42,732 nt of DNA, from assembly GCA_002269645.1 (NCBI GenBank), contig NIVC01004542.1, positions 1 to 42,732 on the forward strand. The letters run 5' to 3'. A program made the position numbers and the translations under genes. Shown here piece by piece: positions 419-40,990 of the stretch; position 1 is the stretch's first letter; the number at the start of each line of letters is the position of its first letter. The notes under the pieces are model-generated. The model ran no database searches. It was not told the origin of the DNA and was given only the letters and a program-made list of their open reading frames with translations. Origin of the DNA: Macrostomum lignano. Taxonomy: Eukaryota.

Positions 419-3400
419 ATGGCCATACCGCAGAGTTATTATGAGCAGCCAAGCTTTCTAGAATTCTTCCAGCGAGCTGCAATATCACTGGACGAGCTCT
501 GCTTCAAGACAGACAAACCATTCGATTTTACCTTTGTTTTGAGCATGATTCAGTCTGTGAAATTGATTGACATTTTTTCTGTGTCTGTGTTGCATTCCTG
601 TTTACTGGACTGAGGTCTCTAATGACCAGATTTGTGTCTGTGGTAAGTGATTGTTAGTTTTATGTATTGTTAACTATATTATTATTAGGATTTTCATTTT
701 TATGCAGCCAGGTTGTTCACCTGGCGCAACGCCAATGCCCACAGCCAGCGCTAGGGCGATTCTGGCCATTCCACAGACTCCTGAGCACATTCAAGCATGC
801 CAATGCTGTACGCAGGCACACTCTCATGCACACGTGCACTCTGTGTGCCTTGGGGATTTGGCCCTTAGGTGAAAATTGCACTTATAATTTTTTCGAAAAG
901 CAGAATCGAGCGTAGGGGATCGTAGTTCTGTGTCCAAATTTGTTATATGAAATTATAATTATTATTGAAATCCTATGTATTTTAACTTGCAACTACAGCC
1001 ATTAGCCAATGCACTTCAAGTGGCGGCTGAGCATAGACCGAAGTGGCCCGAGTCTGTTTGGAAACTGCTCATTTACTCTGGCCTATGGCTGCAGTCTCTC
1101 TACGTTGTGGTGCTCTGTGGAAAGTACGACGTTTTGCAGAATCCGTTGGATATTTTTAAAGACTGTGTATTTGGGGGTAAGTGTGCGAACCTCTGTGCAA
1201 TCTGAGAAATTTATGATTTGATAAAATTTATATCCTTTTTTCTGGCCAGATGCCCAGCTGAAGCAGGCTGTGCCAAGCGACATCTATTGGATGTACATGC
1301 TGCAGCTTGGCTTCTATGTGCACTCTATTATTGGCACATTGTACATGGATATGTGGCGCAAGGACTCTGTTATGATGCTGCTGCATCACGGGCTTACCAT
1401 CTTTCTACTGGAGTTTTCTTTTCTAGTTAGGTGAATGAACTATTATTTGCTTCAGGAGCTGTGTCATTGGGTTATTGTGTCAATAGGTAGAGTTTGCAGG
1501 GATGAGGTGCGTGTCGAGAGCGCCAGTGAAATGACTGGCCTCTGGAGGATTGGGGTACGTAGACAGGGAGGAAGGTGGGCATTGAGAGGGGCAGGAAGTG
1601 GGGTGAGATGTTGAGAGGGGCAGGAAGTGGGGTGAGATGTTAAGAGGGGCAGGGAGTGAGATGGGGTGTTGAGAGGGGCAGGGAGTGAGATGGGGTGTTG
1701 AGAGGGGCAGGGAGTGAGATAGGGTGTTTAGAGGGGCAGGGAGTGAGATGGGGTGTTGAGAGGAGCAGGGAGTGAGGTGTGGTGTTAATGCTTGGGCGCA
1801 ACCTTGGGATTCACTCGGCCGTTTCTATTGGCAACACACACGTGTGTCGCTATTGGACAGAATAGTAGTCACGTGACTGCTCTCAGCCAATAGCGACTTA
1901 CATGTGTGTGCTGCCAATAGAAACGGCGAGTGAATCCAAGGTTGCGCATGTATGGGTGTTAAGAGAGGTAGGGGTGAGGTGGGCTGTTGAGAGGGGCAGG
2001 GAGTGAGGTGGGTTGTTTAGAGGGGCAGGGAGTGACGTGAAGTGTTTAGAGGGGCAGGGAGTGAGGTGGGGTGTTGAGAAAGGCGGGGAGTGAGGTGGGG
2101 TGTTGAGAAACGCAGGGAGTGAGGTGGGGTGTTGAGAAAGGCGGGGAGTGAGGTGGGGTGTTGAGAAAGGCAGGGAGTGAGGTGGGGTGTTGAGAAAGGC
2201 AGGGAGTGAGGTGGGGTGTTGAGAAAGGCAGGGAGTGAGGTGGGGTGTTGAGAGGGGCAGGGAGTGAGGTGAGGTGTAAATTAAATCAGTGCGGTAAAGA
2301 GGAGCGGGACAACAAATATATATATATACAGCCATTTATTCCTGTTTCAAATTATCAATAATGAATCAGGTACCACAAAATCGGCGCACTCGTACTGCTG
2401 CTGCACGACCTAAGCGACATCCTGCTGGAGTTCACTAAAGTGCAAGTGTACTTAAAAGATCGGGCCAAGCAGCAGTGGCAGCTGAACGAATGGATGGCTA
2501 ATATTGGATTTGTCATTTTCAGCATCAGCTGGTTAGCAAATTCTGTTCATATTGATTGTTTACTAGAACTGTATCTATTGATTATTTCTACTTTTGTATT
2601 ATTTTTCACCTGACAACAATTTAGGGCCTGGTTCCGACTCTACTGGTACCCGTTGAAGGTGCTGTACACCAGCACGTGGGGCATCTACATTCATCACAGG
2701 CATAACGATCACAAACTGGTGCTTTTCTTTAACTGCATGCTGATTGCGCTGCAGGTGCTTCACATCTACTGGTTTTATGTGAGTGTCTGCTTTTTTATCC
2801 CTGTCTGAGGAGAATCTTATCCCAGTCTAAGGAGAATCTTATCCCAGTCTGAGGAGAATCTTATCCCAGTCTGAGGAGAATCTTATCCCTGTCTGAGGAG
2901 AATCTTATCCCAGTCTGAGGAGAATCTTATCCAAGTCTAAGGAGAATCTCATCCCAGTCTGAGGAGAATCTTATCCCAGCCTGAGGAGAATCTTATCCCA
3001 GCCTGAGGAGAATCTCATCCAAGTCTGAGGAGAATCTTATCTCAGTCTGAGGAGAATCTTATCCCAGTCTAGGGAGAATCTTATCCCAGCCCGAGGAAAA
3101 TCTTATCTCAGTCTGAGGAGAATCTTATCCCAGCCTGAGGAGAATCTCATCCCAGTCTGAGGAGAATCTCATCCCAGTCTAGGGAGAATCTAATCCCAGT
3201 CTGAGGAGAATCTTATCTCAGTCTGAGGAGAATCTTATCCCAGTCTAGGGAGAATCTTATCCCAGCCCGAGGAAAATCTTATCTCAGTCTGAGGAGAATC
3301 TTATCCCAGCCTGAGGAGAATCTCATCCCAGTCTGAGGAGAATCTCATCCCAGTCTAGGGAGAATCTAATCCCAGTCTGAGGAGAATCTTATCTCAGTCT

Positions 3401-4646
3401 GAGGAGAATCTTATCCCAGTCTGGGGAGAATCTTATCCCAGCCTGAGGAGAATCTCATCCCAGTCTGAGGAGAATCTTATCTCAGTCTGAGGAGAATCTC
3501 ATCCCAGTCTGAGGAGAATCTCATCCCAGTCTAGGGAGAATCTAATCCCAGCCTGAGGAGAATCTCATCCCAGTCTGAGGAGAATCTTATCCCAGTCTAG
3601 GGAGAATCTAATCCCAGCCTGAGGAGAATCTCATCCCAGTCTGAGGAGAATCTCATCCCAGTCTAGGGAGAATCTAATCCCAGTCTGAGGAGAATCTTAT
3701 CTCAGTCTGAGGAGAATCTTATCCCAGTCTAGGGAGAATCTTATCCCAGCCCGAGGAAAATCTTATCTCAGTCTGAGGAGAATCTTATCCCAGCCTGAGG
3801 AGAATCTCATCCCAGTCTGAGGAGAATCTCATCCAGTCTAGGGAGAATCTAATCCCAGTCTGAGGAGAATCTTATCTCAGTCTGAGGAGAATCTTATCCC
3901 AGTCTGGGAGAATCTTATCCCAGCCTGAGGAGAATCTCATCCCAGTCTGAGGAGAATCTTATCTCAGTCTGAGGAGAATCTCATCCCAGTCTGAGGAGAA
4001 TCTCATCCCAGTCTAGAGGAGAATCTAATCCCAGCCTGAGGAGAATCTCATCCCAGTCTGAGGAGAATCTTATCCCAGTCTAGGGAGAATCTAATCCCAG
4101 CCTGAGGAGAATCTCATCCCAGTCTGAGGAGAATCTTATCTCAGTCTGAGGAGAATCTTATCCCAGCCTGAGGAGAATCTTATCTCAGTCTGAGGAGAAT
4201 CTTATCCAGCCTGAGGAGAATCTCATCCCAGTCTGAGGAGAATCTTATCCCAGTCTAGGGAAAATCTTATCCCAGCCTGAGGAGAATCTTATCCAGTCTG
4301 AGGAGAATCTCATCCCAGTCTGAGGAGAATCTTATCTCAGTCTGAGGAGAATCTCATCCCAGTCTAGGGAGAATCTTATCCCAACCTGAGGAAATCTTAT
4401 CCCAGTCTGAGGAGAATCTTATCCCAGCCTGAGGAGAATCTTATCCCAGTCTAGGAGAATCTTATCCCAGTCTGAGGAAAATCTTATCTCAGTCTGAGGA
4501 CAAAATCCTTGAAACCTTGGTTGCAGTTCATCATTCTGCTGCTGATTCGAGTAGCCACAGGTCGCCAGAGCGAGATTGAGGACACTCGGGAATTTGAGGA
4601 GGAAACAACAAAGAACGCCAATAATGGCCGTCCGCATGATGATTGA
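419..4646 (+). CDS. CERS1: Ceramide synthase 1 (TLC/Lag1p domain), 6 exons: 419-642, 999-1176, 1250-1430, 2370-2531, 2625-2778, 4527-4646
   Basis: Manual translation gives KWPESVWKLLIY, MDMWRKDSVMMLLHH, LHDLSDILLEFTK (Lag1p motif), WFRLYWYPLKVLY and IEDTREFE, matching the CERS1/LASS1 subfamily. All introns are GT-AG with compatible phases. Exon 1 needs one extra T in the T-run at about 573-578 to read DIFFCVCVAFLFTGLRSLMTRFVSV; the corrected protein is 339 aa. Confidence 0.9.
1582..1786 (+). repeat. G-rich ~29-bp minisatellite, left block, in CERS1 intron 3
   Basis: About 7 copies of GAGAGGGGCAGGGAGTGAGATGGGGTGTT and variants. Confidence 0.9.
1796..1947. repeat. ~150-bp imperfect palindrome (fold-back or MITE-like)
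   Basis: Arm 1796-1872 (GCGCAACCTTGGGATTCACTCGGCCGTTTCTATTGGCA...) is the reverse complement of arm 1873-1947 (...TGCCAATAGAAACGGCGAGTGAATCCAAGGTTGCGC). The centre is GTCAC|GTGAC with no loop. Confidence 0.9.
1955..2276 (+). repeat. G-rich ~29-bp minisatellite, right block, in CERS1 intron 3
   Basis: About 11 copies of GAGA(A/G)(A/G)GGCAGGGAGTGAGGTGGGGTGTT. Confidence 0.9.
2797..4500 (+). repeat. 22-bp minisatellite (~77 copies) filling CERS1 intron 5
   Basis: Unit CCCAGTCTGAGGAGAATCTTAT, with variant units arranged in higher-order blocks. Confidence 0.97.
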
Positions 4647-6672
4647 TTTTTTAATGTTGTTTACGTGCTGTTAAATTGGCTTTTAAATAATTACATAAGC
4701 TATTTGTATTTGCATAGCTCCTTAATGAGTAGCAAGCATCTTGTCGAGTATGATTTGTTGATTTATAAATTGATATTGTAATTGATTAATTTTAACTTTA
4801 TTAGCTAGCGTGACTGACATTATTATTCATTAAAAGTTTTCTTGCCAAAGCAAATGAAGTGACATTAAATTTTTGTATTTTTAATCGTATTAAATTTTTG
4901 TATTTTTAATCGTATAATTCATATTCATTATACGAGTATATAGTTTTACTTGATAAAACCCAACTCTATGCATATTGGCTTGGCTAAGTACTTTGCTATC
5001 CAACCCACCTCATTCCCTGCCCCACACAGCCAGTCCGCACACTTAGGCGTATTGCCTTAGCTATGTACTTTGTTCTATTTTTAGACTTTGCCGTCGCTCT
5101 TGTGACTTTCTAACCCCGGCGGGCCTTAACTTCACAACCCCGCCTGGCCCATCGACGTTATCTACAAAGCTTTAGACGCAGCAAAGTACATAGTGTCTAT
5201 TTTTGACTTGTACGTCTTACGGGAATGTACATTCATTCTATTAATAGATTATTGTTGTTATTGCCCCCCAAACCGTCCTTATATTAGAAAAAATCCGTTC
5301 TTTAGCCAAGGCGTTATAGTCTAACTACGCTCGTCATGTTTTTAAGTCGATATTTTCTCTCAAAGATTTTAGTATGCAATATCTATTGCTAATGCCGAGA
5401 TATTTTAAAATATTTTTTCTCAGAGAAGTCAACAATATTCTGGAATTTAGCTCGTAGTTACTGCATTCCTAATTATCTTATTATGAAGCACTTTTTGAAA
5501 AAGAATTATTAATTACATTGATAATTCCTAAGTATTTCAATATTTTATTTTTTTAACCTGAAAATTATAGACCTAATTCTGTATTACGATAATTAGACAC
5601 TATTTAGCACCTTCAACATTTCCCCAGGTACCAAATAAGCATCCCTTCTTTCGTATTATTTCCTTAATATCTGCTCTTTTTGATTAATTAATGCTTTCAA
5701 ATTGCCGCCATTCTGACGCTACAATGCAGCAAGCACTTCCACATTGGACACAATTTATTGCAATTTTTGTTGTTGATTTGTTGTGCTAATTTTTTTAGTG
5801 ATTTGTCGTAATTTCTTTTACGGTTATATTTCTATCGTCCTGTTATAGTCGTCGTTTTTATTCATTTTCTACACTTTGATTTGCAATGTTTTAAAGTGTC
5901 CTAAAAGCTTTTACAATTCTTGGCCTCTGTTTTAGTACGGATTAGTTAGTTTATGTGATTTCAAAAATCAAGTGCAATATTAAATATTTTTCAGGATGCA
6001 CCTGACAATGCTCTGCTTACATTTTCTTTTCGTTGTAGTACATTTTTATGTACAGTATTGATAACTTCTGTACCCTTTTAAGCTATCTTTTTAAGTTACT
6101 GTTTTGATTCTGTGTCTGACCACAATCTAGTTATTTTTTCTTAAGTTTGTGCCTTCCATTTCTTAACTTCTACTATTACTTTTAAAGTCATTATTTGTAT
6201 TGGCGCGTGCAGCAGCGGGTGTTGATAAAACTCCTATTGGCTTGATTGCCAACCAAGCTTGATCGGCGCACCCAATATTGATTATCATGACACGGCAAAG
6301 TATTTTAATTCTGTTGATCTTTGCTGGAACCGTATTTTTCTTTAAATTTTCATATAGTTCACTTTCCATGCACAGGTACTCAGTTCTGAATGATAACAGA
6401 GCTTCTGTGTCCCTTGGAGATCCAATTTCCAGCTGGCATATCTGGGGCTCAAAATTCTGTTTTCAGATTTCCACTACAAAGCACTGTAGCTTAGGCTCTG
6501 TTAGCAAAAATTCGGTCAATCAACCAATCACGATTTTAAAAAGTGTAATCATGAACAACTGAAGTAGGACCGCTACTCCAACTTCTAGCATAGGCATCCT
6601 TGGTTGCTTTGGAGAAGTCGGATTTTCATGAACTAATTTGTCTATGGCACTTAGTGCACTAGTTGTACGACA

Positions 6673-22301: not shown

Positions 22302-24250
22302 TATTATATGATCTAGAGTGTGGCCTATATATTGGGTAGTAGGCTCATTCCATATCAGCACGGTCGTAACATGACAGGCTATTTTTACTTATAAAATGAA
22401 ATCTAATAATAGAATATATTTATAGAGTTTCATATAGATATCATAATTTGTATAGATGCTATTAAACCTTAAATGACACTTATGGTTGTAACGACAGGAT
22501 TTTTGACATATAGAAACTAAAAGGTAGAAGTCTTATAACATTTTTCATTTTTGATATTACAGAACATCTTTAGAAATCATACTCTTTTATTAGAATATAT
22601 AAACTCAAAAGGCAACAAAGATACAAAAGAAAAGGCAGCCTTATGGTCGTAACATTATGGTCGTAACATTTTTTTCTGTCAATTCAGTAACTTTGAGGTA
22701 CTAATACATTAAAAATATAATAGATTATTTGGTCACCAATGCTTTTATCTGATGATGCAAGTACTATACTTTTATCTATAGTTTGTTTCAACCTTCAAAA
22801 GCTTTCTATTTGTTTTTAAAAGGTACAAAATCTTAATGATGTCTTTTGCTTCAAAAAAGTCCAAATTTTTATAAAAATGACTTTTTGCCAATTGATAACA
22901 TATTAATCCAACATTTTACCATTCCTTTATTCTTAGATTGTATATATTGCACATAAAAACATTTGGTAAAAAAATAGACTAATAAGACAATGGCAAGCAA
23001 AAATATTGACTTTTTTCTATTTTCCAAATATGTCCATCTTATATGGAATGAGCCAGCAATATATACTATTAGGCCTAGTGAGTCATGGTCTTTCTTGACT
23101 TGAGTGCCTAACCAATGGTTCAAGAGATCTCTAATTGATTGAATATTTCTAAGTTAATTGTCTATTTGAATTGTCATTATTGATTTATATCTTTCAAAGA
23201 TTTCAATTATTGGGTCCCTTGTCTTTTTACAAGCATGAATGAATATTGCTAAGTCAAACATTGAGCTTGTTCAAGAGGTAAGTAGGATGACTTTAGCTAG
23301 GCCTAGCTGATTAGTTCTAATTATGAAATTTTGGATTTTTAAAAATCAAAATTAGAAAACATCAAAAACAAAAAGTAGTTTCTTAGCAACTAGTCAATTG
23401 ATTTATTATATTTTTGTAGCATTCTTTTTGAACAAGACAAATTTAATATATTAAACAACAATATAGACAATGTTTAATATATTTAATATAAACAAAGTTA
23501 AAATCTAAGGTGGCTATTTTTTTAAATTCATCATGATTGATGAGTTCTAGGCTCTTCTTTTCCTTTCTTCCTTGGACTAGGCTATTTAGACCCAGGCTAT
23601 TAAGGGAAAGAGTCAATTAAAGATATAATATTTTTTATTTTGGATTTTTTATTGATGCCATCTGTCAATTGGTATCCTGGTTTTCAGTTTGGCATTGGGG
23701 TTTTGGATCCAAACATAAGTTATTAATTGGCATTGGGATTCTAACATAGGGATTAATTGGCATTGTCTTAAACATATTTTACTGCAGATAGCTTTTTGTC
23801 TATGGCATAAGTTTTGGCTATATTATAGTACAAAGCTGATGTTTAGAAATCAACAAGTATTTAAATCTATATTGAGACATCTTGTGCTTAAATAAGATTT
23901 ACTTTTAATCTCAACCTATAAAACAAATACTTTCATATAATATAGTTGTACTTGTACATGTATTGCTAAGTATTGGCTTTCTACAACAATCTAGCCAAAT
24001 ATTTAAACACTTTACTGGTTGGCCAGGCTTGGAAGTAAAATTAAAAGGACATGTCTATACGCAAACAGTAGGTAATACAGGAGGGCATAGTTATAAATTA
24101 TATTGGTTGCTTTTAAAATAGTCAATTTTGGCTATGACATTGAAATAAATTTGGTCTCTTCATGAAACTCTTGACCAGTAAGCTGGTTAATTTTAAACTG
24201 ACTGCCGCCTACCAACTCCTGCTGCCAAATCTGTTCATTAATTGCGCGAA

Positions 24251-27200
24251 ATGAGTTTTGGACGCGGCCGAGGCCAGCTCAGCCGGGGCCTGGTTATCGG
24301 TCTGGCTCATGAAGCCGATGCTGCTGTTGCCGCTGCTGCTGGCACCACTTCGGCCACTGCGGGTGCCGGTTTTGGCCGGGGATTGACAGAGTTTGGTCGG
24401 GGCGCCACAGCTGCTGCCGCCGCCTCTGCCTCTGCTGCTGATGTACCGTCGCCACCTGCTTCAGCCGACGCCGCCCCCGACGCCAAGCCGCCGCCGGCCA
24501 AATTCGGCCCGACCTTCGTGCCGTTCGGCCGTGGCGCACCTCGTCCTCGCCTTGAGGGCACCGGCGACTCCGCCCCGGCTGCTCCGAGTGCACCCGCGCC
24601 TGCGGCTCCTGTTGCTGCTGCCGCCACGGGCTTTGCTCGCGGATTTGGCCGCGGCTTGACCCCTGCTCTGTCTACCGCAGCCGCCGCTGGCTCCGCTGCC
24701 CCTCCGTCAGAAGCGATGAATCGCCTGTCTGTTCAGCAGTCTCCGAGGCAGGAGGTTCCTGCCGATGCCAATGCCGGCCCCGCTCGGCGACCGGCCAGAC
24801 GGCCTCAGGTGCAGCGAGTCGGCCCGTCGGACCAGCGTGGCACTGCTGGCGAGTCGATCAGCCTGTGCACCAATTTCCTGCGAGTGGAAGGCGCCGAACA
24901 CACAGTTGTCTATCAGTATAACATAACGCTGAATCCGCATGTGGACTCCCGGATGATGCGCGACCGACTGGTGCTGGGCATTCAAGACGAGGAGTTCCAG
25001 CGCGTCACCGGCCGCGTTGTCTCAGGCAACTGCTTGTACACCAATCGGCCTCTGGTTCGCGACTCTGTCGTGTACGAAGTGGCGTCAGGCGGCATGCGGG
25101 TGGCCGTTCAGCTGCAGCTGGTTGGCCAGGCCGCCCTGTCCAGCCTGCCCAGCGTGTACAATATGATATTCCGGTCTGTGCAGGCTCGCATGGATTTGGT
25201 GCAAGTGCGCCGGAACTACTTTAATCCAATGCTGGCTGAGAAAGTGTCCGGTATGGAGGTGAGCGCTTTCAATTCACGTTTTGTTTGGAGATTGGATGTT
25301 TAAATTTAAACATGATGAACTTTAAAAGCAGTTTGGAGAAAGCAATTAGGAGAATCACAGTTGGATTTGTGGAGAATCCCAGTTGGACTTGTGGAGAATC
25401 ACAGTTGGATTTGTGGAGAATCCCAGTTGGACTTGTGGAGAATCACAGTTGGATTTGTGGAGAATCCCAGTTGGACTTGTGGCAAATCACAGTTGGATTT
25501 GTGGAGAATCCCAGTTGGACGTATGGAGAATCCCAGTTGGATTTATGGAGAATCCCAGTTAGACTTTTGGGGAATCCCAGTTGAACTTCTGGAGAATCCC
25601 AGTTGGATTTGTGGAGAATCCCAGTTGGATTTATGGAGAATCCCAGTTGGATTTGTGTAGAATCCCAGTTGGACTTCTGGAGAATCCCAGTTGGATTTGT
25701 GGAGAATCCTAGTTGGATTTATGGAGAATCCCAGTTGGATTTGTGGAGAATCCCAGTTGCACTTATGGAGAATCCCAGTTGGACGTATGGAGAATCCCAG
25801 TTGGACTTATGGAGAATCCCAGTTGGACTTATGGAGAATCCCAGTTGGATTTGTGGAGAATCCCATTTGGACTTTTGGAGAAACCCACAGAGGGGGGCAT
25901 CGATAGTAATCTGCAATGCCAGCTCAATCTGTCCACAGGTGTGGCCGGGCTACATCACCTCGGCCAGTCAGGTGGACGGCGGCCTCCACCTAATGGTTGA
26001 GTCCAGCTGCCGGGTGGTTCGAACCCAAACAGTTTACGAGCTGTTTCAGTGCCTCGGCTACCGCTTAGACGCTATGAACGATGCTCTGTTGGAGTCCACG
26101 GTTGTCACTCGCTACAACAATAGGTTTTCGCGAGTTGACCAAATCGACATGAGCAAGGACTGCACCAGCACGTTCGAGCGATGCGGACGACAGGTATCCT
26201 ACATTGACTATTACAGGCAGCAGTACCGGTTGGAAATTCAGGACCCGCACCAGCCCTTGCTCATTAGCCGGGTCAAGCCAACTCGAGGCAGCGATGGCCG
26301 TTTAATTGAACAGCCTCCGAAGTGCCTGGTGCCGGAGCTCTGCTACGTGACCGGCATCACGGATGAAATGCGGCGAGACTTTCGACTGATGCGCGACCTG
26401 TCCAAGTTCACCAAGGTGCTTTTTGGGGATTTCAGATGGGTTTTATAAAGTACCTGGGGTTTCTTGGGTGAATTCAAGCACCACTGTAGTGAAACTCAAA
26501 GATCTTGTAGTTTTTGGAGGCCTATTTCCTGGGAAAATGATTGCATTGGCAGCGCTTGCAGCCTAGTGGTCAGAGCGTCGGACTCATAACTGAAAGGTCG
26601 GGGGTTCGATTCTCGACCCACTGGAAACAATTTGTGTCCTTGAGCAAGACACTTAACTCTGCATTGCTACAGTTCACCCAGCTGTAAAATGGGTGCCAGC
26701 ATTAGCTGGGGTTATTGAGGGTGTGTGGCGACCCACCCCCAGTCCTTGGACTGAACAGCCGTACGCAGCCTTCAGATGCGCCGCGCATCCGAGTAAAATG
26801 GTAGTATATAACAGGACCTGAACTCAAAGATCATGTACTTTTAGAGGCCAATTTCCTGGAAAAATACAGTAGACTTTTTTATTTTTTTCAAAAGATTGTA
26901 CTCGTACTTTTCTGGGTTATCAGATGTACTTTTGTGAGATAGCTCGTAGTAGATGTACTTTTCCTGACCTAGTAGATGTATTTTTCCTGACCTAGTGGAT
27001 GTATTTTTCCTGACCTAATAGATGTACTTTTCCAGACCTAGTAGATGTACTTTTCCTGACCTAGTGGATGTATTTTTCCTGACCTAATAGATGTACTTTT
27101 CCAGACCTAGTAGATGTACTTTTCCTGACCCAGCAGTTGTACTTTTTCTGACCCAGTAGTTGTACTTTTCCTGACCTAATAAGTGTAACTTTCCTGACCT

Positions 27201-30009
27201 AGTATGTGTACTTCTGTTGACAGGCAGGTGTAATTTGCAAAAATCAAAGCCGCTGTAAGTCCCTATTCCTCCCCTATCCAGCTGTCCCCGGATCGCCGTA
27301 TCGTTGAGCTGCGCAAATTCGTCCAGGCCATCAACAACCGGCCGGAGTGTCGCCAGCTGCTGGACGCCTGGGGCCTGCGCCTGCTGGAGGAGCCGGAGGT
27401 GGTGCCCGCCCGCCGCTTCGTCAACGAGCGGGTGCTGTTCGGCGGAGGCGGAGACCGCGGCGCTCTCGTCCCGGTATCGGTCGGCCAGACCAGCGAGTTC
27501 AAGCGGGCCCTGGCCGATAACCGGGTGCTGATTGACGGCAAGCTGCTGAAGTGGCTGGTGGTCTATCCGGCCAGGGAGGAGCGGATCATCGCCTCGTTCT
27601 GCGAGACCATGATGAAGAAATGCCGCGCCATGGGCATCACGGTTGCCCAGCCCAGCACCGTAGCCCTGCCGAATGACAGCACTGGGAACTATCAGCAGGC
27701 TATTAAAAATAATTTCTCAACGGATTTGAATCTGGTCTGCGCCGTGTTCACTTCACAGCGACAGGAGCGGTACAACGCTATTAAGCGTTTGTGCTGCAAC
27801 GATCTGGTGGTCCCCAGCCAGTGCCTGTGGACCAAGACTATCAGCGACCCCAAGAAGATGGGCAGCGTGGCCGTCAACGTTGCGGCACAGATTAACGTCA
27901 AGCTCGGCGGCGCCCTGTGGGGCATCGAAATTCCTTACCAGCGGTTTATGGTGAGTCTGGCAATTGTCTACCTGTCAAGTTTCTTACCTTTAAAACTTCC
28001 GGTATGCTAGATGATTCACTCACTTCCGGTATGCTTGATGATTCACTCACTTCCGGTATGCTTGATGATTCACTCACCTCCGTTATGCTTGATGATTCAC
28101 TCACCTCCGGTATGCTTGATGATTCACTCACCGGTATGCTTGATGATTCACTCACTTCCGGTATGCTTGATGATTCACTCACTTCCGGTATGCTTGATGA
28201 TTCACTCACTTCCGGTATGCTTGATGATTCACTCACCTCCGGTATGCTTGATGATTCACTCACCTCCGGTATGCTTGATGATTCACTCACCGGTATGCTT
28301 GATGATTCACTCACTTCCGGTATGCTTGATGATTCACTCACTTCCGGTATGCTTGATGATTCACTCACTTCCGGTATGCTTGATGATTCACTCACTTCCG
28401 GTATGCTTGATGATTCACTCACTTCCGGTATGTTTGATGATTCACTCACTTCCGGTATGCTTGATGATTTATTTACTTCGGGTATGCTTGATGATTCAAA
28501 CACTTCCGATATGCTTGATGATTCACTCACTTCCGGTATGCTTGATGATTCATTTACTGCCGGTACGCGGTTAATTTATTCACCCTCTACCTGTCAAATG
28601 AATCCTCCCTACATACTTCCGGTATGAAAAACTCATCATTCTAATAACTGGCTTGTCACCACCCCTGCAACCGCAGATGATCGGAATCGACGTGTACCAC
28701 GAGGACAAGCTGCGCTCCAGATCCGTCACAGGCGTCGTGGCCTCGGTGGACCAGTCGTGCACCCGCTGGTACTCGCGGGTGGCTTTCCAACGCCGGGGCG
28801 AGGAGATCTTGAACTCCATGCGTGTCATCCTGCACAGCCAGCTTGTCCGGTACGTCAACAATGTTGGCAGCCTGCCCGAAACCATCTTCGTTTACCGGGA
28901 CGGCGTGTCGGACAAGCAGATTGCCGATGTGCAGCAGAAGGAGGTTCGCGCCGTCTACGAAGCCATCAGCAGCTTCGGGGCGCAGGACTACCGGCCCAGA
29001 CTGGTGTTCCTTGTGGTGCAGAAGCGGATTAACCAGCGCCTCCTGCTGCAAAGGGGAACCGGCTACACCAACGCGCTGCCAGGTAAGATCGCGGCTTTTG
29101 CTTATAGCTTATAGCTATAACTATACAAAACTGACCAGTTAGAGCCCAGCCTCCATGAGAATCGCAATCAAAACACCCTGAGAATCGCTATCAAACCACC
29201 CTGAGAATCGCCATCAAACCACCCTGAGAATCGCCATCAAACCACCCTGAGAATCGCTATCAAACCACCCTGAGAATCGCCATCAAACCACCCTGAGAAT
29301 CGCCATCAAACCACCCTGAGAATCGCCATCAAACCACCCTGAGAATCGCTATCAAACCACCCTGAGAATCGCCATCAAACCACCCTGAGAATCGCCATCA
29401 AACCACCCTGAGAATCGCCCTCAAACCACCCTGAGAATCGCCCTCAAACCACCCTGAGAATCGCCCTCAAACCACCCTGAGAATCGCCCTCAAACCAGGC
29501 TGAGAATCACCCTCAAACCAGGCTGAGAATCACCATCAAACCACCCTGAGAATCGCCCTCAAACCAGGCTGAGAATCGCCCTCAAACCAGGCTGAGAATC
29601 ACCCTCAAACCAGGCTGAGAATCGCCCTAAACAGGCTGAGAATCGCCCTCACTAAGTGTTGTCAAGAACTAAAAAACCTGATATTTCTCAACCGCATTCC
29701 CACGCAGGCACGGTCCTGGACCACACCATCACCCGCCCGGACATGATGGACTTCTTCCTGGTGCCGCAGCACGTCAACCAGGGCACGGTGACGCCGGGCC
29801 ACTTCATAATCCTAGAATGCTCTGGCGGCGTGCCAGTAGACGAGATCCAGCAGCTCACCTTTCGCAGCTGCCATCTGTACTACAACTGGGCCGGCTCTAT
29901 CCGAGTCCCGGCGCCGTGCCAGTACGCACACAAGCTGGTGTACATGGTGGGCCAGAACACCAAAGATGAACCGGCCGAGGCCATCTGCGACCGCCTGTTC
30001 TACTTGTAA
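24251..30009 (+). CDS. piwi: PIWI-clade Argonaute, 953 aa; exons 24251-25258, 25939-26415, 27282-27950, 28677-29082, 29708-30009
   Basis: RG-rich N-terminus, WPGY, PAZ (TRYNNRF...YIDYY...LVPELC), MID (QINVKLGG) and PIWI domain with IGIDVYH, GEEI, YRDGV and YAHKL (D-E-D-H). The C-terminal LFYL is typical of the Piwi clade rather than AGO. All splice phases are consistent and there is no frameshift. Confidence 0.97.
25349..25880 (+). repeat. 22-bp minisatellite (~24 copies) in Piwi intron 1
   Basis: Unit GAGAATCCCAGTTGGA(T/C)TT(G/A)TG. Confidence 0.95.
26548..26812 (+). mobile_element. tRNA-derived SINE in Piwi intron 2
   Basis: tRNA-like head with A box (GCCTAGTGGTCAGAGCG), anticodon-like loop CTCATAA (Met-like) and B box GGTTCGATTC. 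It is followed by GTGTCCTTGAGCAAGACACTTAAC...CCAGCTGTAAAATGGG, a conserved metazoan SINE core-type body. Confidence 0.85.
26950..27205 (+). repeat. 23-24-bp minisatellite (~11 copies) in Piwi intron 2
   Basis: Unit TAGATGTACTTTTCCTGACCTAG. Confidence 0.9.
28003..28560 (+). repeat. 27-bp minisatellite (~21 copies) in Piwi intron 3
   Basis: Unit GATGATTCACTCACTTCCGGTATGCTT. Two 24-bp variant units lie about 159 bp apart. Confidence 0.95.
29157..29650 (+). repeat. 23-bp minisatellite (~21 copies) in Piwi intron 4
   Basis: Unit GAGAATCGCCATCAAACCACCCT, grading to GAGAATCGCCCTCAAACCAGGCT at the 3' end. Confidence 0.95.
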
Positions 30010-35008: not shown

Positions 35009-35686
35009 TACTTATAAAAACATATTTCCTCCAGTGAGATTTCAAAAGTTATTATTTAGTTTATTATTCCAATTGATAAATCTTATTTCCCGAAGAACAA
35101 AAGACACCTTCATTTTTATATTGTTTAACTTTATTTATTTAACTCAACATTATTATTTATTATTTATTATTACCTTATCATATTAAATATTTCTTGATTA
35201 GATAGTTGAGGCCCTTTCATTTAGGCTCATCATTAAAAGCTAATAGCTTCAAGTGGCCAAAAAGCCTAATTTGCAGTTTTAGACATTCAATAACCTATAA
35301 TTCAAAAAACATGGTACAAACATAATTGTAAGTATTTATTTAGACTACCCCATTCAATTATGTCCTATATACCAAGAATGAGTTCAAGGTGGTGTACACT
35401 CCTGTGAGTGCCTGCTCAGGTTAGTTGGTATAATGGGCAGTAATGTCTTTCGCTGGTTGTGTGACAATGTTGCTTAAAGTGCACCAGGGGGCACACAGCC
35501 TCCTGCTTTTAACTAAAAGACATCGTAAAGAAAACTAAAGGACATCTAGAATTTATAAAATATGTGGCAGACTGAGGGCAGCCAGTCCTTTCCTTATGAT
35601 TAAATTTGTAGAGTTTCAAAAATGCCCCTCTTGCACGCCTGCCCCATTTCTGCTATAGCTTATCTCACCCTAATTTCTCAAAAAGA

Positions 35687-36469: not shown

Positions 36470-36501
<32 letters not shown>

Positions 36502-36867
36502 GCAGCAATCCAGCGCCGCTGTCTGCAGCAATGCACAAGCAGACGAAGAGGAAGAAGAATTCCTGCTAACCCGGGCATGCTGGAGTGCGCAGCCAGTCAG
36601 CTGATTGCCGACTGCCCGACTCAGGTGTCGCCATCGGCTCCGACGCAGTCGCCGCCGCAGCCGCGCGAGCAGCCCGGGAAAGCCAGACAGCAGCAGCAGC
36701 AGCAGGCGCCGCAGGCGTCAGTCAGCGGAGACGTCCCCGCCCTGACCAAGGAGCAGCTGCGGGAGAGCCTGCTGTACCTGTTGGAGAATGATGACGCCTT
36801 CCTCGGCTCGCTGCACCGGGCCTACGTGGCCAGCCTGCAGCGCCGGCTCGCGTCGCCGCGTTTCTGA
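35687..36867 (+). CDS. DCP1: mRNA-decapping enzyme subunit 1, intronless
   Basis: N-terminal EVH1-like domain (INLAAIQK...WEKCNCDGVFLLYRR...FIVLNKRS...IHGMWFY), a Gln-rich linker and a C-terminal trimerization motif (LTKEQLRESLLYLLENDDAFLGSLHRAY). The two frames join if one C is added at 36570-36572. Confidence 0.92.
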
Positions 36868-37869
36868 GTCCCTGTTCCGTCGTTGCTGGTTGCTGTTGCC
36901 GCCCAGTGCAAAGGCGGGGGTTGAGGAGGTCCTTGTGAAATTGTTATTTTTTTATTGTTTGTGTCCCCAGTTGTAAAACAATAGCCCAGCATTCAAACAC
37001 CCCCTCCGAGTGTTCATATCTGCCTACTCATAGTAGCAAACCATTTGGAGGTGTTTTATTTTTCTGTTGTTTGCAGTGTATATCAACAATAACAATATAA
37101 ATAACAATAATACGCGTAAATTATTAGTTTGGTCTCCGATATGCTTGTTGTATAGTTGCTCTGTCCTTGAGCAGCATTTTGAGTTTTGGCCCCGCTGTGC
37201 AGCAAAACCATTCATTTGTTCTATTATGGATGTACATTGCGTCACTTGTTGTCACAGTTGGCTGTGGCGCTGGTCATCTGCCGTGTCACGCCGGAAAATG
37301 TCGGCACTGCTTCTGGAATAAAAGCAGCCCAGCTTGTCTGTGTGTTTTACATAAGGCTCATCACCTGTTTAATTAATTTACTGATCGATTGAGATAAGAC
37401 ATGTCTCTGGCTGATTGGAGTCTTTAACTTTTTTTTATTAACGACTATAGCATTACAACATCATATTTTATAGGAAATCAAAAAAATTTACAATATAATT
37501 AAGATCATCTAGCATAGTAAGCTACTGCTACTACTTACAGTAGTATAATTAATAGCTGCTGCTATCAAGATGGCAGGTTGTTGGTAATAAAACTAGCTTT
37601 TACGCACTAAAATACGATTGAATGTACAAGCTAACGATCTATCCTGGTACTCAGATTCAGTAGTACAGTATCAAAGCGTAAATATCAATAACAATTGAAA
37701 GCATCACAAATAGAGGCATTTTTGTTGAAAATCCACACTGCAATTCTCTAGTTGAACGGGTAGTTGGTTTTTTAGCTGATTTCGATATTTTTAGAGATTA
37801 CCAAAGTTGTATGGTTGATAATTGAAAATCTTGAATGCCCAGTCTGAAGCCTGAGGAGCTGTGAGGGCG

Positions 37870-38345
37870 GCCCAGCAACTGAGGATCTGGGAGGCTGGCC
37901 CAGCAACTGAGGATCTGGGAGGCTGGCCCAGCCAACTGAGGATCTGGGAGGCTGGCCCAGCAACTGAGGATCTGGGAGGCTGGCCCAGCCAACTGAGGAT
38001 CTGGGAGGCTGGCCCAGCAACTGAGGATCTGGGAGGCTGGCCAAGCAACTGAGAATCTGAGAGGCTGGCCCAGCAACTGAGGATCTGGGAGGCTGGCCCA
38101 GCAACTGAGGATCTGGGAGGCTGGCCCAGCAACTGAGGATCTGAGAGACTGGCCCAGCGACTAAGGATCTGGGAGGCTGGCTCAGCAACTGAGGATCTGG
38201 GAGGCTGGCCCAGCAACTGAGGATCTGGGAGGCTGGCTCAGCAACTGAGGATCTGGGAGGCTGGCTCAGCAACTGAGGATCTGGGAGGCTGGCTCAGCAA
38301 CTGAGGATCTGGGAGGCTGGCTCAGCAACTGAGGATCTGGGAGGA
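37870..38345. repeat. 28-bp minisatellite (~17 copies)
   Basis: Unit CCCAGCAACTGAGGATCTGGGAGGCTGG. Confidence 0.95.
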
Positions 38346-38522
38346 TAATAGTACAGCCTTTGTCAGCAGCAAATTTGAGCAAACAAAATCCAGCACCCCC
38401 AAATCCTCAAACGGGTTTTAAAAAATTTCACTGTGCACGGCATCACAGTTGAGTTCTAAGGATTGAAGAAGAGCAAATCGGAGGAAATGCCTCAGCCGCG
38501 AGCACCGGCCTGGCTGTCACGC

Positions 38523-40990
38523 TCAGGTGAGAACCAGATGCTCGTCAAAGCCGGTGTACATGGCGGTGCTGCCCATTTTGACCAGGTTGCGCGAATACCT
38601 GGCTGTGATGCGGATGCAGCTCGTGCACAGGAAGCTGGTCAGCAGGAAGTTCGACCGCATGCCGTAGCCGAACCGGCCCTTGTAGCCATAGTAACCAGCG
38701 ACAGCTCCAGTGAGCACTGGCGCCACGGTGCTGGGTCGGGCGTTCCGCACCATCTGCTCCATCGACTGCGGCATCACTGCGTCTCCGATCTGTGACACCG
38801 GGTTTTGGACAGGGATGTCATTTACAGGTGACTGACATGCTGTAGTGGGTTACAGACATGCTGTAGTGTGTGTTACACACATACTGTAATCGTGTGTTAC
38901 AGGCATGCTGTATCGTGTGCTAAAGACATGCTGTATCATATGTTACAGAGTGTCTCATGTGCTATACAGACATGCTGTAGCATGTGTTTCAGCCAGGCTA
39001 TCTGCACAAACCTCGCTCAGCGCCAGTCGATATTCGCCTTTGCCGAAGGCCTCCCAGGCGTGCTGCATGTGCACGATCTCCAGGGTCTTCAGCACGCCCA
39101 GCGGGATGTCGATCTCCGGCTCGCCAGTGGGGGGTATCAGCTTTATCAGCTTGCCCAGAAGCTCCAGGTAGCGCTCCGCCTCGAACAGCTTCTTGATTTC
39201 GCCGCCACCGTCAAGCACATTCAGGAAGTCCGAGGCTTCCTCGTAACCGGCTATGGTGGCTCCCGCCTTCAGCACCTGGCAGATGCAAGGACTGGTGAGT
39301 CAGCTTGCGTTCTATCGGTCGTCCACACCTCAGGTCCTCCCCACCTCAGGTCCTCCCCACCTCAGGTCCTCCCCACCTCAGGTCCTCCACACCTCAGGTC
39401 CTCCCCACCTCAGGTCCTCCCCACCTCAGGTCCTCCCACCTCAGGTCCTCCCCACCTCAGGTCCTCCCCACCTCAGGTCCTCCCCACCTCAGGTCCTCCC
39501 CACCTCAGGTCCTCCCCACCTCAGGTCCTCCCCACCTCAGGTCCTCCCCACCTCAGGTCCTCCCCACCTCAGGTCCTCCCCACCTCAGGTCCTCCCCACC
39601 TCAGGTCCTCCACACCTCAGGTCCTCCCCACCTCAGGTCCTCCCCACCTCAGGTCCTCCCCACCTCAGGTCCTCCCCACCTCAGGTCCTCCCCACCTCAG
39701 GTCCTCCCACCTCAGGTCCTCCCCACCTCAGGTCCTCCCCACCTCAGGTCCTCCCCACCTCAGGTCCTCCCCACCTCAGGTCCTCCCCACCTCAGGTCCT
39801 CCCCACCTCAGGTTCTCCCCACCTCAGGTCCTCCCACCTCAGGTCCTCCCCACCTCAGGTCCTCCCACCTCAGTTCCTCCCCACCTCAGTTCCTCCCCAC
39901 CTCAGTTCCTCCCCACCTCAGTTCCTCCCCACCTCAGGTCCTCCCCACCTCAGGTCCTCCCCACCTCAGGTCCTCCCCACCTCAGGTCCTCCCCACCTCA
40001 GTTCCTCCCCACCTCAGTTCCTCCCCACCTCAGTTCCTCCCCACCTCAGGTCCTCCCCGCCTCAGGTCCTCCCCACCTCAGGTCCTCCCCACCTCAGGTC
40101 CTCCCCACCTAAAGTCCTCCCTACCTCAGTTCCTCTCCACCTCAGGTCCTCCCCACCTCAGGTCCTCCCCACCTCAGGTCCTCCCCACCTCAGGTCCTCC
40201 CCACCTCAGTTCCTCCCCACCTCAGGTCCTCCCCACCTCAGTTCCTCCCCACCTCAGGTCCTCCCCGCCTCAGGTCCTCCCCACCTCAGGTCCTCCCCAC
40301 CTCAGGTCCTCCCCACCTAAAGTCCTCCCTACCTCAGTTCCTCTCCACCTCAGGTCATCCCCACCTCAGTTCCTCTCCACCTCAGGTCCTCCCCACCTCA
40401 GGTCCTCCACACCTCAGGTCCTCCCCAACCTCAGTTCTTCCCCTTAGTTCCCCTCAGTTCCCTGCAGCATACACTGCTGCATGCTGCTAGATGTATTTAC
40501 AATTGCAACATGTACATCGCGTATTTCGCTTCTCGTTCCCAGTGTTTTAGCAGTCCCTGGCTGCCAATCCAAATCAAGGACCTCTTCTCACCTTGATACA
40601 GACCACCTGGTAGTCTTTGTCATCGAAGGCGTGCAGCGCATCGTGCAGGTCGGACACCACGGAGCCGATGGTGCCAGCCTCGCCGACTTCGTTGAAGTCC
40701 AGCCGGTGCGAGCAGCCACCACCGTCCTCATCATCAGCTCCATCATCGTCATCTCCAGCCTCCGTTTTCTCGGCGCTGAGCTCCGATTTGTTCGGCGTCT
40801 GTTTACTAATCGCCGCCGAATGATGGTCGCTATGGCAACGGACTGGGCGTGGATCGTCGGCCAGGCGGAGCGCCGGTCGGCGCAGCGCCCGGTAGCAGGC
40901 GAGGCTCTCGCGCCATCGGGCGCCGGCGCCACCGACGCCGCCGCCGCGCAGACTCAAATCGACAGCTGATCGCTCCAGGTTGGGGGCGCC
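38523..40990 (-). CDS. Unidentified spliced protein-coding gene; exons ~40990-40592, 39275-39012, 38789-38523; start codon unresolved
   Basis: Three GC-rich, codon-biased frames join in phase 0 through AAG|GTGAGA, TGCCAG|GTG, GAG|GTTTGT and TCACAG|ATC. The product has an acidic patch and a C-terminal hydrophobic Gly-rich segment. There is no in-frame ATG in the first exon; a possible upstream exon is 41363-41262. Confidence 0.65.
38834..38995. repeat. Degenerate ~23-bp repeat (~7 copies) in intron 38790-39011 of the minus-strand gene
   Basis: Recurrent GACATGCTGTA..GTGTTACA. Confidence 0.75.
39324..40450. repeat. 17-bp minisatellite (~66 copies) filling intron 39276-40591 of the minus-strand gene
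   Basis: Unit CCTCAGGTCCTCCCCAC (sense strand GTGGGGAGGACCTGAGG). Confidence 0.97.

What the first reader, a model, noticed from the sequence alone, without database searches (positions are those of the whole stretch)
1582..40450. Intron-confined minisatellites with different units but a shared CCCAG..CTGAG / GAGAATC core
Seen: eight long introns in three genes each hold a different 17-29 bp array, while coding exons and the large AT-rich spacers (19-24 kb, 30-33.7 kb) hold none. The units are not fully independent. GAGAATC is in the CERS1 intron 5, Piwi intron 1 and Piwi intron 4 units. CCAG(T/C)CTGAGGAGAATC (CERS1) parallels CCAGGCTGAGAATC (late Piwi intron 4 units) and CCCAGCAACTGAG(G/A)ATC (28-mer). 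The Piwi intron 3 unit has TGAGTGAATC on its reverse strand. The flank of the 28-mer array (37838-37858) contains CCCAGTCTGA and GCCTGAGGAG, both found in the CERS1 array. Inference: either a common seeding or amplification mechanism targets introns, or a DNA/RNA-binding factor recognises the core. Possible roles are intronic licensing or anti-silencing marks (by analogy to PATC sequences in C. elegans introns) or small-RNA substrates, since the unit lengths overlap the siRNA/piRNA size range. This is the best candidate for an undescribed system in the window.
Basis: partly seen in the sequence, partly recalled or inferred. Interest (0 to 1): 0.75.

Follow-up and report, generated by a model that had tools for sequence, protein, structure and literature searches.

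The report
Minisatellites filling flatworm gene introns
In this piece of the flatworm Macrostomum lignano genome, nearly every long intron is long only because its own short tandem repeat has expanded inside it. The intron bias is real and strong, but the proposed shared core motif is barely above chance and nothing tested points to a function.

Summary
The arrays are real. Twelve tandem arrays (units of 4-29 bp, 2 to 78 copies) cover 6.3 kb, or 15% of the window. The window is Macrostomum lignano, whose genome is reported to be 15% simple and tandem repeats.

Eight arrays lie in eight introns: two in a ceramide-synthase gene, all four in a Piwi gene, and two in an orphan minus-strand gene that is not DCP1. 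They make up 32-98% of those introns. Array-free introns are only 65-130 bp, so the long introns are long because of the arrays.

Relative to 1.5 kb of intron backbone against 20.7 kb of other non-coding DNA, the enrichment is about 37-fold (P about 6e-8). However, the 28-mer array, a (TCTG)n array and a 16-mer array at the window edge are not shown to be intronic.

The shared core is weak. P is 0.005-0.05 against shuffled units and 0.015-0.08 against GC-matched genomic segments, with no excess in a whole-array permutation test. PATC, mirage, introner and transposon-borne-satellite features were tested and not met. One array-bearing Piwi intron sits at an ancestral position. Piwi loci of four other animals hold no such arrays.

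Best reading: ordinary minisatellites that expanded in place, at an unusual density. Function is unproven.

The parts
1582..1786 (+). Array A1: 29-mer x7.1 (TTGAGAGGGGCAGGGAGTGAGATGGGGTG), G-rich on the sense strand, in the ceramide-synthase intron at about 1432-2369. It is the left half of one array.
   Evidence: TRF; units printed; TLC-domain exons on both sides
1954..2277 (+). Array A2: the same 29-mer x11.2. It is the right half of the same array, separated from A1 by a 165-bp palindromic insertion at about 1790-1953.
2795..4500 (+). Array A3: 22-mer x77.8 (TTATCCCAGTCTGAGGAGAATC). It fills 98% of the ceramide-synthase intron at about 2781-4527 and starts 14 nt after the 5' splice site. 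It has an 8-unit (176 bp) higher-order repeat.
25349..25887 (+). Array B1: 22-mer x24.5 (GGAGAATCCCAGTTGGACTTGT), 78% of Piwi intron 1 (about 25250-25938).
26947..27213 (+). Array B2: 23-mer x11.6 (TAGTAGATGTACTTTTCCTGACC) in Piwi intron 2 (about 26418-27250). Degenerate copies lie in its left flank. The intron also holds a SINE-like insertion.
27995..28565 (+). Array B3: 27-mer x21.4 (ACTTCCGGTATGCTTGATGATTCACTC), 79% of Piwi intron 3 (about 27953-28676). It is not coding: stop codons separate it from both flanking exons.
29156..29651 (+). Array B4: 23-mer x21.7 (TGAGAATCGCCATCAAACCACCC), 79% of Piwi intron 4 (29084-29707). This intron sits at an ancestral position. Both edge units resemble the A3 unit more than the central units do.
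37851..38344 (.). Array C1: 28-mer x17.6 (CTGAGGATCTGGGAGGCTGGCCCAGCAA). It lies between the end of DCP1 (36867) and the last mapped exon of the minus-strand orphan gene (38495). It may be 3' UTR or intergenic and is not shown to be intronic.
38834..38999 (-). Array C2: degenerate 23/47-mer x7, 79% of the 210-bp intron 38799-39008 of the orphan gene.
39317..40443 (-). Array C3: 16-mer x70.6 (GGTCCTCCCCACCTCA; sense strand TGAGGTGGGGAGGACC, G-rich), 86% of the orphan-gene intron 39279-40591.
41542..41739 (.). (TCTG)n x49.5 microsatellite upstream of the orphan gene's mapped exons. Its context is undetermined.
42544..42732 (.). Array C5: 16/47-mer (CTACTCTCCCATCTGT) that runs off the window end. 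Degenerate copies begin at 42486. Its context is undetermined.
643..4646 (+). Host gene 1: ceramide synthase (TLC domain). Four short array-free introns (about 643-707, 870-998, 1176-1249, 2532-2624) and two array-filled introns.
   Evidence: Pfam PF03798 E = 2.4e-26
24248..30009 (+). Host gene 2: Piwi-clade Argonaute with 5 exons. All 4 introns hold an array.
   Evidence: Pfam PAZ and Piwi; PDB Piwi matches
38495..41104 (-). Host gene 3: a predicted orphan gene specific to Macrostomum. It has clean GT-AG junctions and GC-rich exons. It has no Pfam or PDB match and no homologue outside M. lignano.

Best explanation
These are ordinary, locus-specific minisatellites that expanded in place inside what were short (about 65-240 bp) introns of Macrostomum lignano genes. 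They are one local sample of the tandem-repeat load already reported for this genome.

Shown:
- Each array is a private unit amplified head to tail.
- The arrays grew by duplication of multi-unit blocks, which left higher-order repeats.
- They fill the intron except for 9-130 nt after the 5' splice site and 27-110 nt before the 3' splice site.
- They are the reason the host introns are long.

Inferred:
- Short tandem duplications arise everywhere, but further expansion happens preferentially in transcribed, recombination-accessible gene bodies, by replication slippage, unequal exchange or gene conversion.
- Selection removes arrays from exons and from the splice-signal zones, so arrays accumulate only in intron interiors and perhaps UTRs.
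- The weak sharing of CTGAGG / GAGAATC / TGAGGTGGGG strings is most likely a mix of chance and a mild sequence preference of the expansion process. It does not look like a recognition element.
For: - Arrays and units.
- Species: exon blocks are 95-100% identical to two M. lignano UniProt proteins. Arrays are 14.7% of the window, against 15% simple and tandem repeats genome-wide (PMC5730564).
- Higher-order structure: an 8-unit, 176-bp block repeated at least 3 times in A3, and 2-unit and 3-unit alternations in B1 and B2.
- Origin in place: degenerate copies of the unit lie in the flanks of A1/A2, B2, B3 and C5.
- No sequence is shared between array loci other than the retrotransposon LTRs and mariner terminal repeats.
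- Array-free introns are 65-130 bp and AT-rich (22-35% GC). Array-bearing introns are 32-98% array (57-98% without the transposon-bearing Piwi intron 2).
- Intron enrichment P = 5.6e-8.
- Two-copy duplications with 21-30 bp units exist in the AT-rich DNA but are not expanded there.
- Piwi intron 4 lies at the same codon (PPG|S/TV, split Gly) as in the coral Paramuricea, so the array entered a pre-existing ancient intron.
- Piwi loci of a coral, a mussel, a fish and an acorn worm (45.6 kb) hold no minisatellite.
- A palindromic element and a SINE-like element have inserted into an array or array-bearing intron. This suggests these intron interiors tolerate insertions.
Against: - A 37-fold intron bias is larger than a simple 'neutral everywhere, purged from exons' model predicts. 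The inferred link to transcription or recombination is untested.
- Arrays are 45-66% GC in seven of ten cases, while intron backbones are about 39% GC. They are therefore not amplified samples of typical intron sequence.
- Unit similarity is nominally above shuffles.
- With the A3 consensus as query, three other arrays score at or above the 99.9th percentile of the background. The edge units of B4 and C1 are more A3-like than their central units. This is what a shared ancestry or seeding motif would predict.
- Only one window was examined.
Confidence: 0.6

Rival explanations
1. A dispersed minisatellite family with a seeding core. Six of the ten units descend from, or are nucleated by, a common short motif (CCCAG..CTGAGG..GAATC / TGAGGTGGGG) that favours breakage or slippage. 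This would be a flatworm counterpart of the shared core of human hypervariable minisatellites.
For: - GAGAATC lies on the same strand in three units (P = 0.005; 0.013-0.025).
- CTGAGGA is the best common 7-mer (0 of 300 shuffles).
- A3 and B1 share two 8-mers and the same 22-bp period.
- The left edge of B4 (CCCAGCCTCCATGAGAATC) and the left edge of C1 (CCCAGTCTGAAGCCTGAGGAG) resemble the A3 unit.
- C1, B4 and B1 score at or above the 99.9th percentile of the background against the A3 consensus.
- TGAGGTGGGG is shared on the sense strands of the 29-mer and the 16-mer.
- GAGAATC and CTGAGG are not enriched in non-array DNA.
Against: - All statistics are post hoc and marginal. Against GC-matched genomic segments the overall similarity gives P = 0.07-0.08.
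- The column-permutation test shows no excess.
- The best background match to A3 (score 15, inside the retrotransposon pol gene) beats every array.
- Four units lack the motif.
- Resemblance of the 16-mer to the human core, as I recall that core, is 12 of 15 positions, with a family-wise P of about 0.09.
Confidence: 0.15
2. The arrays are satellite-like cargo of mobile elements (Helitron/Helentron-type or MITE-type) that insert preferentially into transcribed genes.
For: - A3, B1, B4, C1 and C3 have sharp boundaries with no degenerate copies in the flanks.
- Mobile elements clearly do land in these introns.
- Satellite-like arrays carried by Helentrons are documented in the oyster (PMC7492417, listed).
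Against: - No flank or terminus is shared between any two array loci.
- A3 and C2 begin 9-14 nt from the 5' splice site, which leaves no room for element termini.
- Every locus has a different unit.
- No transposase or helicase is associated.
Confidence: 0.08
3. The arrays are functional intronic elements: expression licensing or anti-silencing marks, splicing regulators, or small-RNA precursors recognised through the core.
For: - The intron bias is strong.
- One host is Piwi itself.
- The units contain purine-rich GGAGAA strings. I recall these from the literature as resembling splicing-enhancer motifs; this was not tested here.
- In C. elegans an intronic minisatellite (CeRep25B) is associated with alternative-splicing regions (PMC4039745).
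Against: - The orientation of the core relative to transcription is inconsistent.
- PATC features are absent.
- No array carries both 5'-like and 3'-like splice signals on the sense strand.
- The arrays are not found in Piwi introns of other animals.
- Transposon insertions into arrays are tolerated.
- Unit lengths do not match the species' small-RNA sizes.
- No Rfam family matches.
Confidence: 0.07
4. The arrays created the introns, either as introner-like gain or as mirage-type duplication of exon-intron boundaries.
For: - A3 is essentially the whole intron (98%).
- Piwi intron 3 lies 4-5 codons away from the position used in fish and mussel.
Against: - Piwi intron 4 is at an ancestral position shared with a cnidarian.
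- The units show no similarity to the adjacent exon-intron boundaries.
- Introns do not share sequence with each other.
Confidence: 0.03

Closest known systems
Minisatellites / VNTRs, including the shared-core families of human hypervariable minisatellites (Jeffreys et al. 1985; recalled from memory, not read here)
   Same: Head-to-tail units of 16-29 bp, arrays of 0.2-1.7 kb, mostly GC-rich, with internal variant units and higher-order blocks. There is a hint of a short G-rich string shared between loci. The sense strand of the 16-mer matches 12 of 15 specified positions of the human core as I recall it.
   Different: The density is extreme: 15% of the window, and eight of thirteen introns. 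The location is almost exclusively intronic. The shared string is statistically marginal. Length polymorphism, the hallmark of VNTRs, could not be examined.
Intron-enriched tandem repeats in Daphnia pulex (PMC3152781)
   Same: Tandem-repeat density is highest in introns, which that paper calls a rare feature in animals. Units longer than 6 bp are important.
   Different: It is a different phylum. In that genome overall repeat density is low, whereas here arrays make up most of each long intron.
Amphioxus 'mirage' minisatellites (PMC3087553)
   Same: Minisatellites of 10-72 bp (up to about 160 bp) inside genes that do not disturb normal splicing and are homogenised except at the array edges.
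   Different: Mirages duplicate an exon-intron boundary. The units here show no similarity to the neighbouring boundaries.
PATC (periodic A/T cluster) introns of C. elegans germline genes
   Same: A repetitive, non-coding intron filler that lengthens introns of expressed genes.
   Different: PATCs are AT-rich with a 10-bp phasing of A/T runs. These arrays are 38-66% GC, have periods of 16-29 bp and show no lag-10 signal.
Satellite-like arrays carried by Helentron/MITE elements in bivalves (PMC7492417)
   Same: Short satellite-like arrays are dispersed through gene-rich DNA.
   Different: Those arrays share unit families and element termini across loci. Here every locus has its own unit and no shared flanks.

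Membership tests
Minisatellite / VNTR | Head-to-tail repeats with a unit of about 10-100 bp and many copies | tested here: met
   TRF periods of 16-29 bp, 7-78 copies, 86-95% matches for the main arrays (C2 is degenerate at 69%)
Minisatellite / VNTR | Internal variant units and block duplications, indicating slippage or unequal exchange | tested here: met
   40 distinct variants in A3 with an 8-unit higher-order repeat. Edge units are more divergent.
Minisatellite / VNTR | Copy-number polymorphism between alleles or individuals | not testable with these tools
   No second M. lignano haplotype, homeolog or read set could be retrieved
Shared-core minisatellite family (Jeffreys type) | A common 10-16 bp core present in the units of many unlinked loci, beyond chance | tested here: inconclusive
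   P = 0.005-0.05 against shuffles. P = 0.013-0.08 against GC-matched genomic segments. No excess under column permutation. Only three linked gene loci were sampled.
PATC introns | AT-rich sequence with A/T runs phased at about 10 bp | tested here: not met
   A/T runs of 3 or more cover 0-18% of the arrays. Lag-10 autocorrelation is zero or negative. The top lags equal the unit period. GC is 38-66%.
Mirage minisatellites | The repeat unit contains a copy of the adjacent exon-intron boundary | tested here: not met
   No unit aligns to its exon boundary above shuffled controls. The significant flank matches are degenerate intronic units only.
Transposon-borne satellite (Helentron/MITE cargo) | Arrays flanked by conserved element termini shared among loci | tested here: not met
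   Self-BLAST finds no similarity between array loci outside the LTRs and terminal inverted repeats of two unrelated transposons. A3 and C2 abut the 5' splice site.
Introner-like elements | Many introns share near-identical sequence and occupy lineage-specific positions | tested here: not met
   Introns share no sequence. Piwi intron 4 is at the same split Gly codon as in Paramuricea. The position of intron 3 is ambiguous.
piRNA / siRNA source locus | Small RNAs map to the arrays, with 1U or ping-pong signatures | not testable with these tools
   No read data are available. Published small-RNA size classes are about 20, 22 and 28-32 nt (PMC4604429).

The most novel reading that the evidence does not exclude
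M. lignano has a sequence-guided process that builds minisatellites specifically in introns. In this reading, a short core (CCCAG-CTGAGG-GAATC, grading into TGAGGTGGGG) nucleates or spreads arrays within transcribed genes. That would explain why this species' introns are about twice as long as those of its sister species, and would give a non-vertebrate counterpart of the human minisatellite core.
Probability: 0.12. Interest if true: 0.6.

Novelty: new member of a known kind. Interest (0 to 1): 0.3.

Why it matters
M. lignano is a regeneration and stem-cell model. Its genome has been hard to assemble because of simple and tandem repeats, and the make-up of those repeats is explicitly left open in the literature read here (PMC5730564, PMC10468722).

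If the pattern in this window holds genome-wide, three things follow:
- A large part of that repeat load sits inside introns.
- It would account for the long mean intron (1.1 kb, against 0.56-0.69 kb in sister species).
- It would matter for gene models, for primer and guide design, and for transgene construction.

It would also offer a tractable system for asking why minisatellites expand in some chromatin or transcription contexts and not others. As it stands, it is an unusually dense instance of a familiar kind of sequence, not a new system.

Tried and rejected
- Finding the same or related arrays elsewhere. A metagenome scan for CCCAGNCTGAGGAGAATC returned 85 stretches (80 listed as loci), each listed locus with a single match and no array, which is chance level.
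- Exact-protein look-ups of the DCP1 ORF, the mariner transposase, the Piwi exon-1 ORF and the two M. lignano proteins found no contigs. Homeologs and sister-species introns therefore could not be compared.
- The first homologue search, which included array-derived residues, found nothing.
- Rfam and tRNA scans of the window were empty. The SINE-like element in Piwi intron 2 got only sub-threshold, irrelevant Rfam hits.
- The orphan gene has no Pfam or PDB match and no homologue outside the species.
- Coding repeat rejected. The 27-mer array is separated from both flanking exons by stop codons, and the Piwi domain is continuous without it.
- Background k-mer bias rejected as the cause of motif sharing. 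GAGAATC (5 observed, 4.3 expected) and CTGAGG (12 observed, 15.2 expected) are not enriched outside the arrays.
- Consistent G-richness of the non-template strand (an R-loop or G-quadruplex driver) rejected as general. Only the 29-mer and the 16-mer are G-rich on the sense strand, with long-loop G4 motifs only, and B3 and B4 are C-rich.
- Resemblance to the human minisatellite core, as recalled from memory, was not significant after multiple testing.
- The paper by Wasik et al. 2015 could not be opened.

Full report
**What is in the sequence**

- A 29-mer at 1582-1786 and 1954-2277.
- A 22-mer at 2795-4500 (78 copies).
- A 22-mer at 25349-25887.
- A 23-mer at 26947-27213.
- A 27-mer at 27995-28565.
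- A 23-mer at 29156-29651.
- A 28-mer at 37851-38344.
- A degenerate 23/47-mer at 38834-38999.
- A 16-mer at 39317-40443 (71 copies).
- (TCTG)n at 41542-41739.
- A 16/47-mer at 42544-42732 that runs off the window.

Printing the units in register shows clean periodicity with variant units. Together the arrays are 6,282 bp, or 14.7% of the window.

**Where the window comes from**

The coding pieces on the minus strand at 38.5-41.1 kb match two UniProt proteins of Macrostomum lignano, at about 95-100% identity within the best-aligned exon blocks. The Piwi domain is only 47-50% identical to any other animal's. The window is therefore M. lignano, a free-living flatworm.

Its genome paper reports that simple and tandem repeats make up 15% of the assembly and LTR elements 21%. 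It gives about 5 introns per gene and a mean intron of 1.1-1.4 kb (PMC5730564). A later paper gives mean introns of 558 and 692 bp in two sister species against 1,114 bp in M. lignano, and states that a full account of the repeats is outside its scope (PMC10468722). I found no paper describing intronic minisatellites in Macrostomum.

**Gene models**

- A ceramide-synthase gene (TLC domain, E = 2.4e-26) lies on the plus strand at about 0.6-4.6 kb.
- A Piwi gene (PAZ and Piwi domains) lies on the plus strand at 24248-30009, with five exons.
- DCP1 lies at 35687-36867. It ends there, so the arrays at 37.8-40.4 kb are not in DCP1.
- Those arrays lie among exons of a minus-strand predicted gene (exons 41104-40592, 39278-39009, 38798-38495). 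It has clean GT-AG junctions. It has no Pfam or PDB match and no homologue outside the species.
- The window also holds a BEL/Pao retrotransposon (10988-17311, LTRs 95-99% identical) and a mariner element (33700-35010).

**Is the confinement to introns real?**

Largely yes, but not strictly.

Eight arrays sit in eight introns. The split 29-mer and the 22-mer are in the ceramide-synthase gene, one array is in each of the four Piwi introns, and the 16-mer and the 23/47-mer are in the orphan gene. They make up 32-98% of those introns, or 57-98% once the SINE-like insertion in Piwi intron 2 is set aside.

The array-free introns of the ceramide-synthase gene are 65, 129, 74 and 93 bp and 22-35% GC. 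DCP1 probably has one 71-nt intron without an array (by eye). 'Long introns hold arrays' is therefore circular, because the arrays are what make those introns long.

With arrays and transposons masked, the introns offer 1,486 bp of backbone, against 20,659 bp of other non-exon, non-transposon DNA. Eight of eleven arrays falling in the former gives a binomial P of 5.6e-8, about a 37-fold enrichment.

There are exceptions:
- The 28-mer lies downstream of the last mapped exon of the orphan gene, in 40%-GC DNA with no convincing further exon.
- (TCTG)n and the terminal 16-mer lie upstream of that gene.

These three may lie in UTRs, in an outron or in intergenic DNA. RNA data are needed to decide.

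**How the arrays sit and grew**

- They leave 9-130 nt after the 5' splice site and 27-110 nt before the 3' splice site. That is the zone needed for splice signals and the branch point.
- A3 contains an 8-unit (176 bp) block repeated at least three times. B1 and B2 begin with 2-unit and 3-unit alternations. This is the signature of block duplication by slippage or unequal exchange.
- Four arrays (the 29-mer, B2, B3, C5) have degenerate copies of their unit in the flanks. This indicates origin in place.
- A 165-bp palindromic element has inserted into the 29-mer array, and a SINE-like element into Piwi intron 2.
- Two-copy duplications with 21-30 bp units exist in the AT-rich DNA (for example 4864-4915 and 23705-23765). 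Birth of duplications is therefore not confined to introns, but expansion is.

**Are these new introns?**

At least one is not. M. lignano intron 4 splits the Gly codon of ..ALPG|TVLD... The coral Paramuricea has an exon boundary at the same ..PPPG|SVVD...

Intron 3 (..YQRFM|MIGID..) lies 4-5 codons from the boundary in a fish (VPL|KNLMVVG) and a mussel (|LKNLMVIG). Its history is unclear.

The Piwi loci of the coral, the mussel, the fish and an acorn worm together span 45.6 kb. They contain no minisatellite at TRF score 80 or above. The arrays are thus a Macrostomum feature, not a Piwi feature.

**The shared core**

I also found TGAGGTGGGG shared by the 29-mer and the reverse strand of the 16-mer. 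Because the orphan gene is on the minus strand, this puts it on the sense strand of both host genes.

Significance depends on the null model:
- Against mononucleotide shuffles of the ten consensus units:
  - longest shared string 10, P = 0.04;
  - a 7-mer on one strand in three units, P = 0.005;
  - summed pairwise gapped similarity, P = 0.006;
  - best common 7-mer CTGAGGA, 0 of 300 shuffles, among 18 tests.
- Against GC-matched segments drawn from the non-array part of the same window, which is the null for 'random local sequence got amplified':
  - summed similarity, P = 0.07-0.08;
  - the three-unit 7-mer, P = 0.013-0.025;
  - the best pair, P = 0.2-0.27.
- Comparing whole arrays plus flanks with column-permuted versions gives no excess (369 against 381.6 +/- 8.7).

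GAGAATC and CTGAGG are not enriched outside the arrays, so genome-wide k-mer bias is not the cause.

With the A3 consensus as a query, the 28-mer, B4 and B1 score 14, 12 and 11, where the 99.9th percentile of the background is 11. However, the best background hit (15) lies inside the retrotransposon pol gene.

The edge units of B4 (CCCAGCCTCCATGAGAATC at 29145-29163) and of the 28-mer (37838-37858) are more A3-like than their central units. That is what common descent would predict. It is also the product of a search with many degrees of freedom.

I rate the core as suggestive but unproven.

**Functional proposals**

- PATC features are absent.
- The core is on the sense strand in the ceramide-synthase and Piwi arrays. 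It is on the plus strand for the 28-mer, whose only candidate host is on the minus strand, and on the antisense strand in the Piwi intron-3 unit. A common RNA-binding factor is therefore unlikely.
- No array has both 5'-like and 3'-like splice signals on its sense strand.
- No Rfam family matches.
- Small-RNA size classes in this species are about 20, 22 and 28-32 nt (PMC4604429). The unit lengths are simply the usual minisatellite range.
- Only the 29-mer and the 16-mer are G-rich on the non-template strand, with long-loop G-quadruplex motifs. Other arrays are C-rich or neutral. An R-loop or G-quadruplex driver cannot be general.

**Verdict**

The arrays and a strong intron bias are real. The host-gene assignment and the strict confinement needed correction.

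The best explanation is expansion of ordinary minisatellites inside formerly short introns. Selection protects the exons and splice-signal zones, and some unidentified property of transcribed gene bodies favours expansion. This is a dense local sample of the repeat load already known for this genome.

The closest known phenomena are vertebrate minisatellites and VNTRs, the intron-enriched tandem repeats of Daphnia pulex (PMC3152781), and the amphioxus mirages (PMC3087553). The defining feature of mirages, duplication of an exon-intron boundary, is not met here.

A seeding core or a function is not excluded. It needs the genome-wide, comparative, small-RNA and reporter tests listed under next steps.

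Noticed in passing
window 1790-1953: A near-perfect palindromic element of about 165 bp (arms 1796-1845 and 1900-1947) is inserted into the 29-mer array and splits it in two. GGTGTTAA is present on both sides, a possible 8-bp target duplication. It looks like a MITE.
   Followed up: partly
window 26493-26865 (Piwi intron 2): A tRNA-like head (box A/B-like TAGTGGTCAGAGC...GGTTCGATTCTCG) is followed by a segment that resembles MIR/CORE-SINE sequence by eye. It is flanked by 46-bp direct repeats (26493-26538 and 26821-26865, 87% identical) that resemble the neighbouring 23-mer unit. ARAGORN and Rfam do not call it.
   Followed up: partly
window 10988-17311 (-): A full-length BEL/Pao LTR retrotransposon. 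It has three long ORFs (DUF1759 gag-like; Peptidase_A17 plus RT; integrase plus DUF5641) and LTRs of about 250 bp that are 95-99% identical. It is probably recent.
   Followed up: partly
window 33700-35010 (-): A 1.3-kb mariner/Tc1 element with 34-bp terminal inverted repeats (97% identical) and an uninterrupted transposase ORF of 353-377 aa.
   Followed up: partly
window 36521-36591 (DCP1): The DCP1 reading frame switches here. A 71-nt phase-0 intron (GCT|GTCTGC ... CTAAC ... GCGCAG|GCC) would join the two parts. It is GC-rich and array-free, unlike the AT-rich short introns of the ceramide-synthase gene.
   Followed up: partly
window 38495-41104 (-): The host of the 16-mer and 23/47-mer arrays is a predicted gene with no homologue outside M. 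lignano among 1.8 billion representative proteins, and no Pfam or PDB match. Its upstream coding exon has no in-frame ATG, so the start may come from an upstream exon or a spliced leader.
   Followed up: partly
window 7442-10140: A GC-rich (about 53%) block in otherwise AT-rich DNA, with a 283-aa ORF (7442-8290, +) and several overlapping ORFs. It has no Pfam hit and no tandem array. Its identity is unknown.
   Followed up: no
window 17312-18700: A GC-rich stretch just downstream of the BEL/Pao element, with broken minus-strand ORFs that look like a decayed retroelement. There is no significant Pfam hit.
   Followed up: no
window 21897-21968 / 22236-22309: A 74-bp inverted repeat (95% identical) in the AT-rich spacer. 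It could be a foldback or MITE-like element.
   Followed up: no
window 13310-13326 (-): CCCAGGCGAGGAGAATC lies inside the retrotransposon pol ORF. It is the best match in the window to the ceramide-synthase 22-mer unit outside that array. I treated it as chance and used it as a yardstick for the background.
   Followed up: yes
window 4864-4915, 23705-23765, 32604-32650, 32915-32961: Two-copy tandem duplications with 24-30 bp units lie in AT-rich non-genic DNA. These look like proto-arrays that have not expanded.
   Followed up: no
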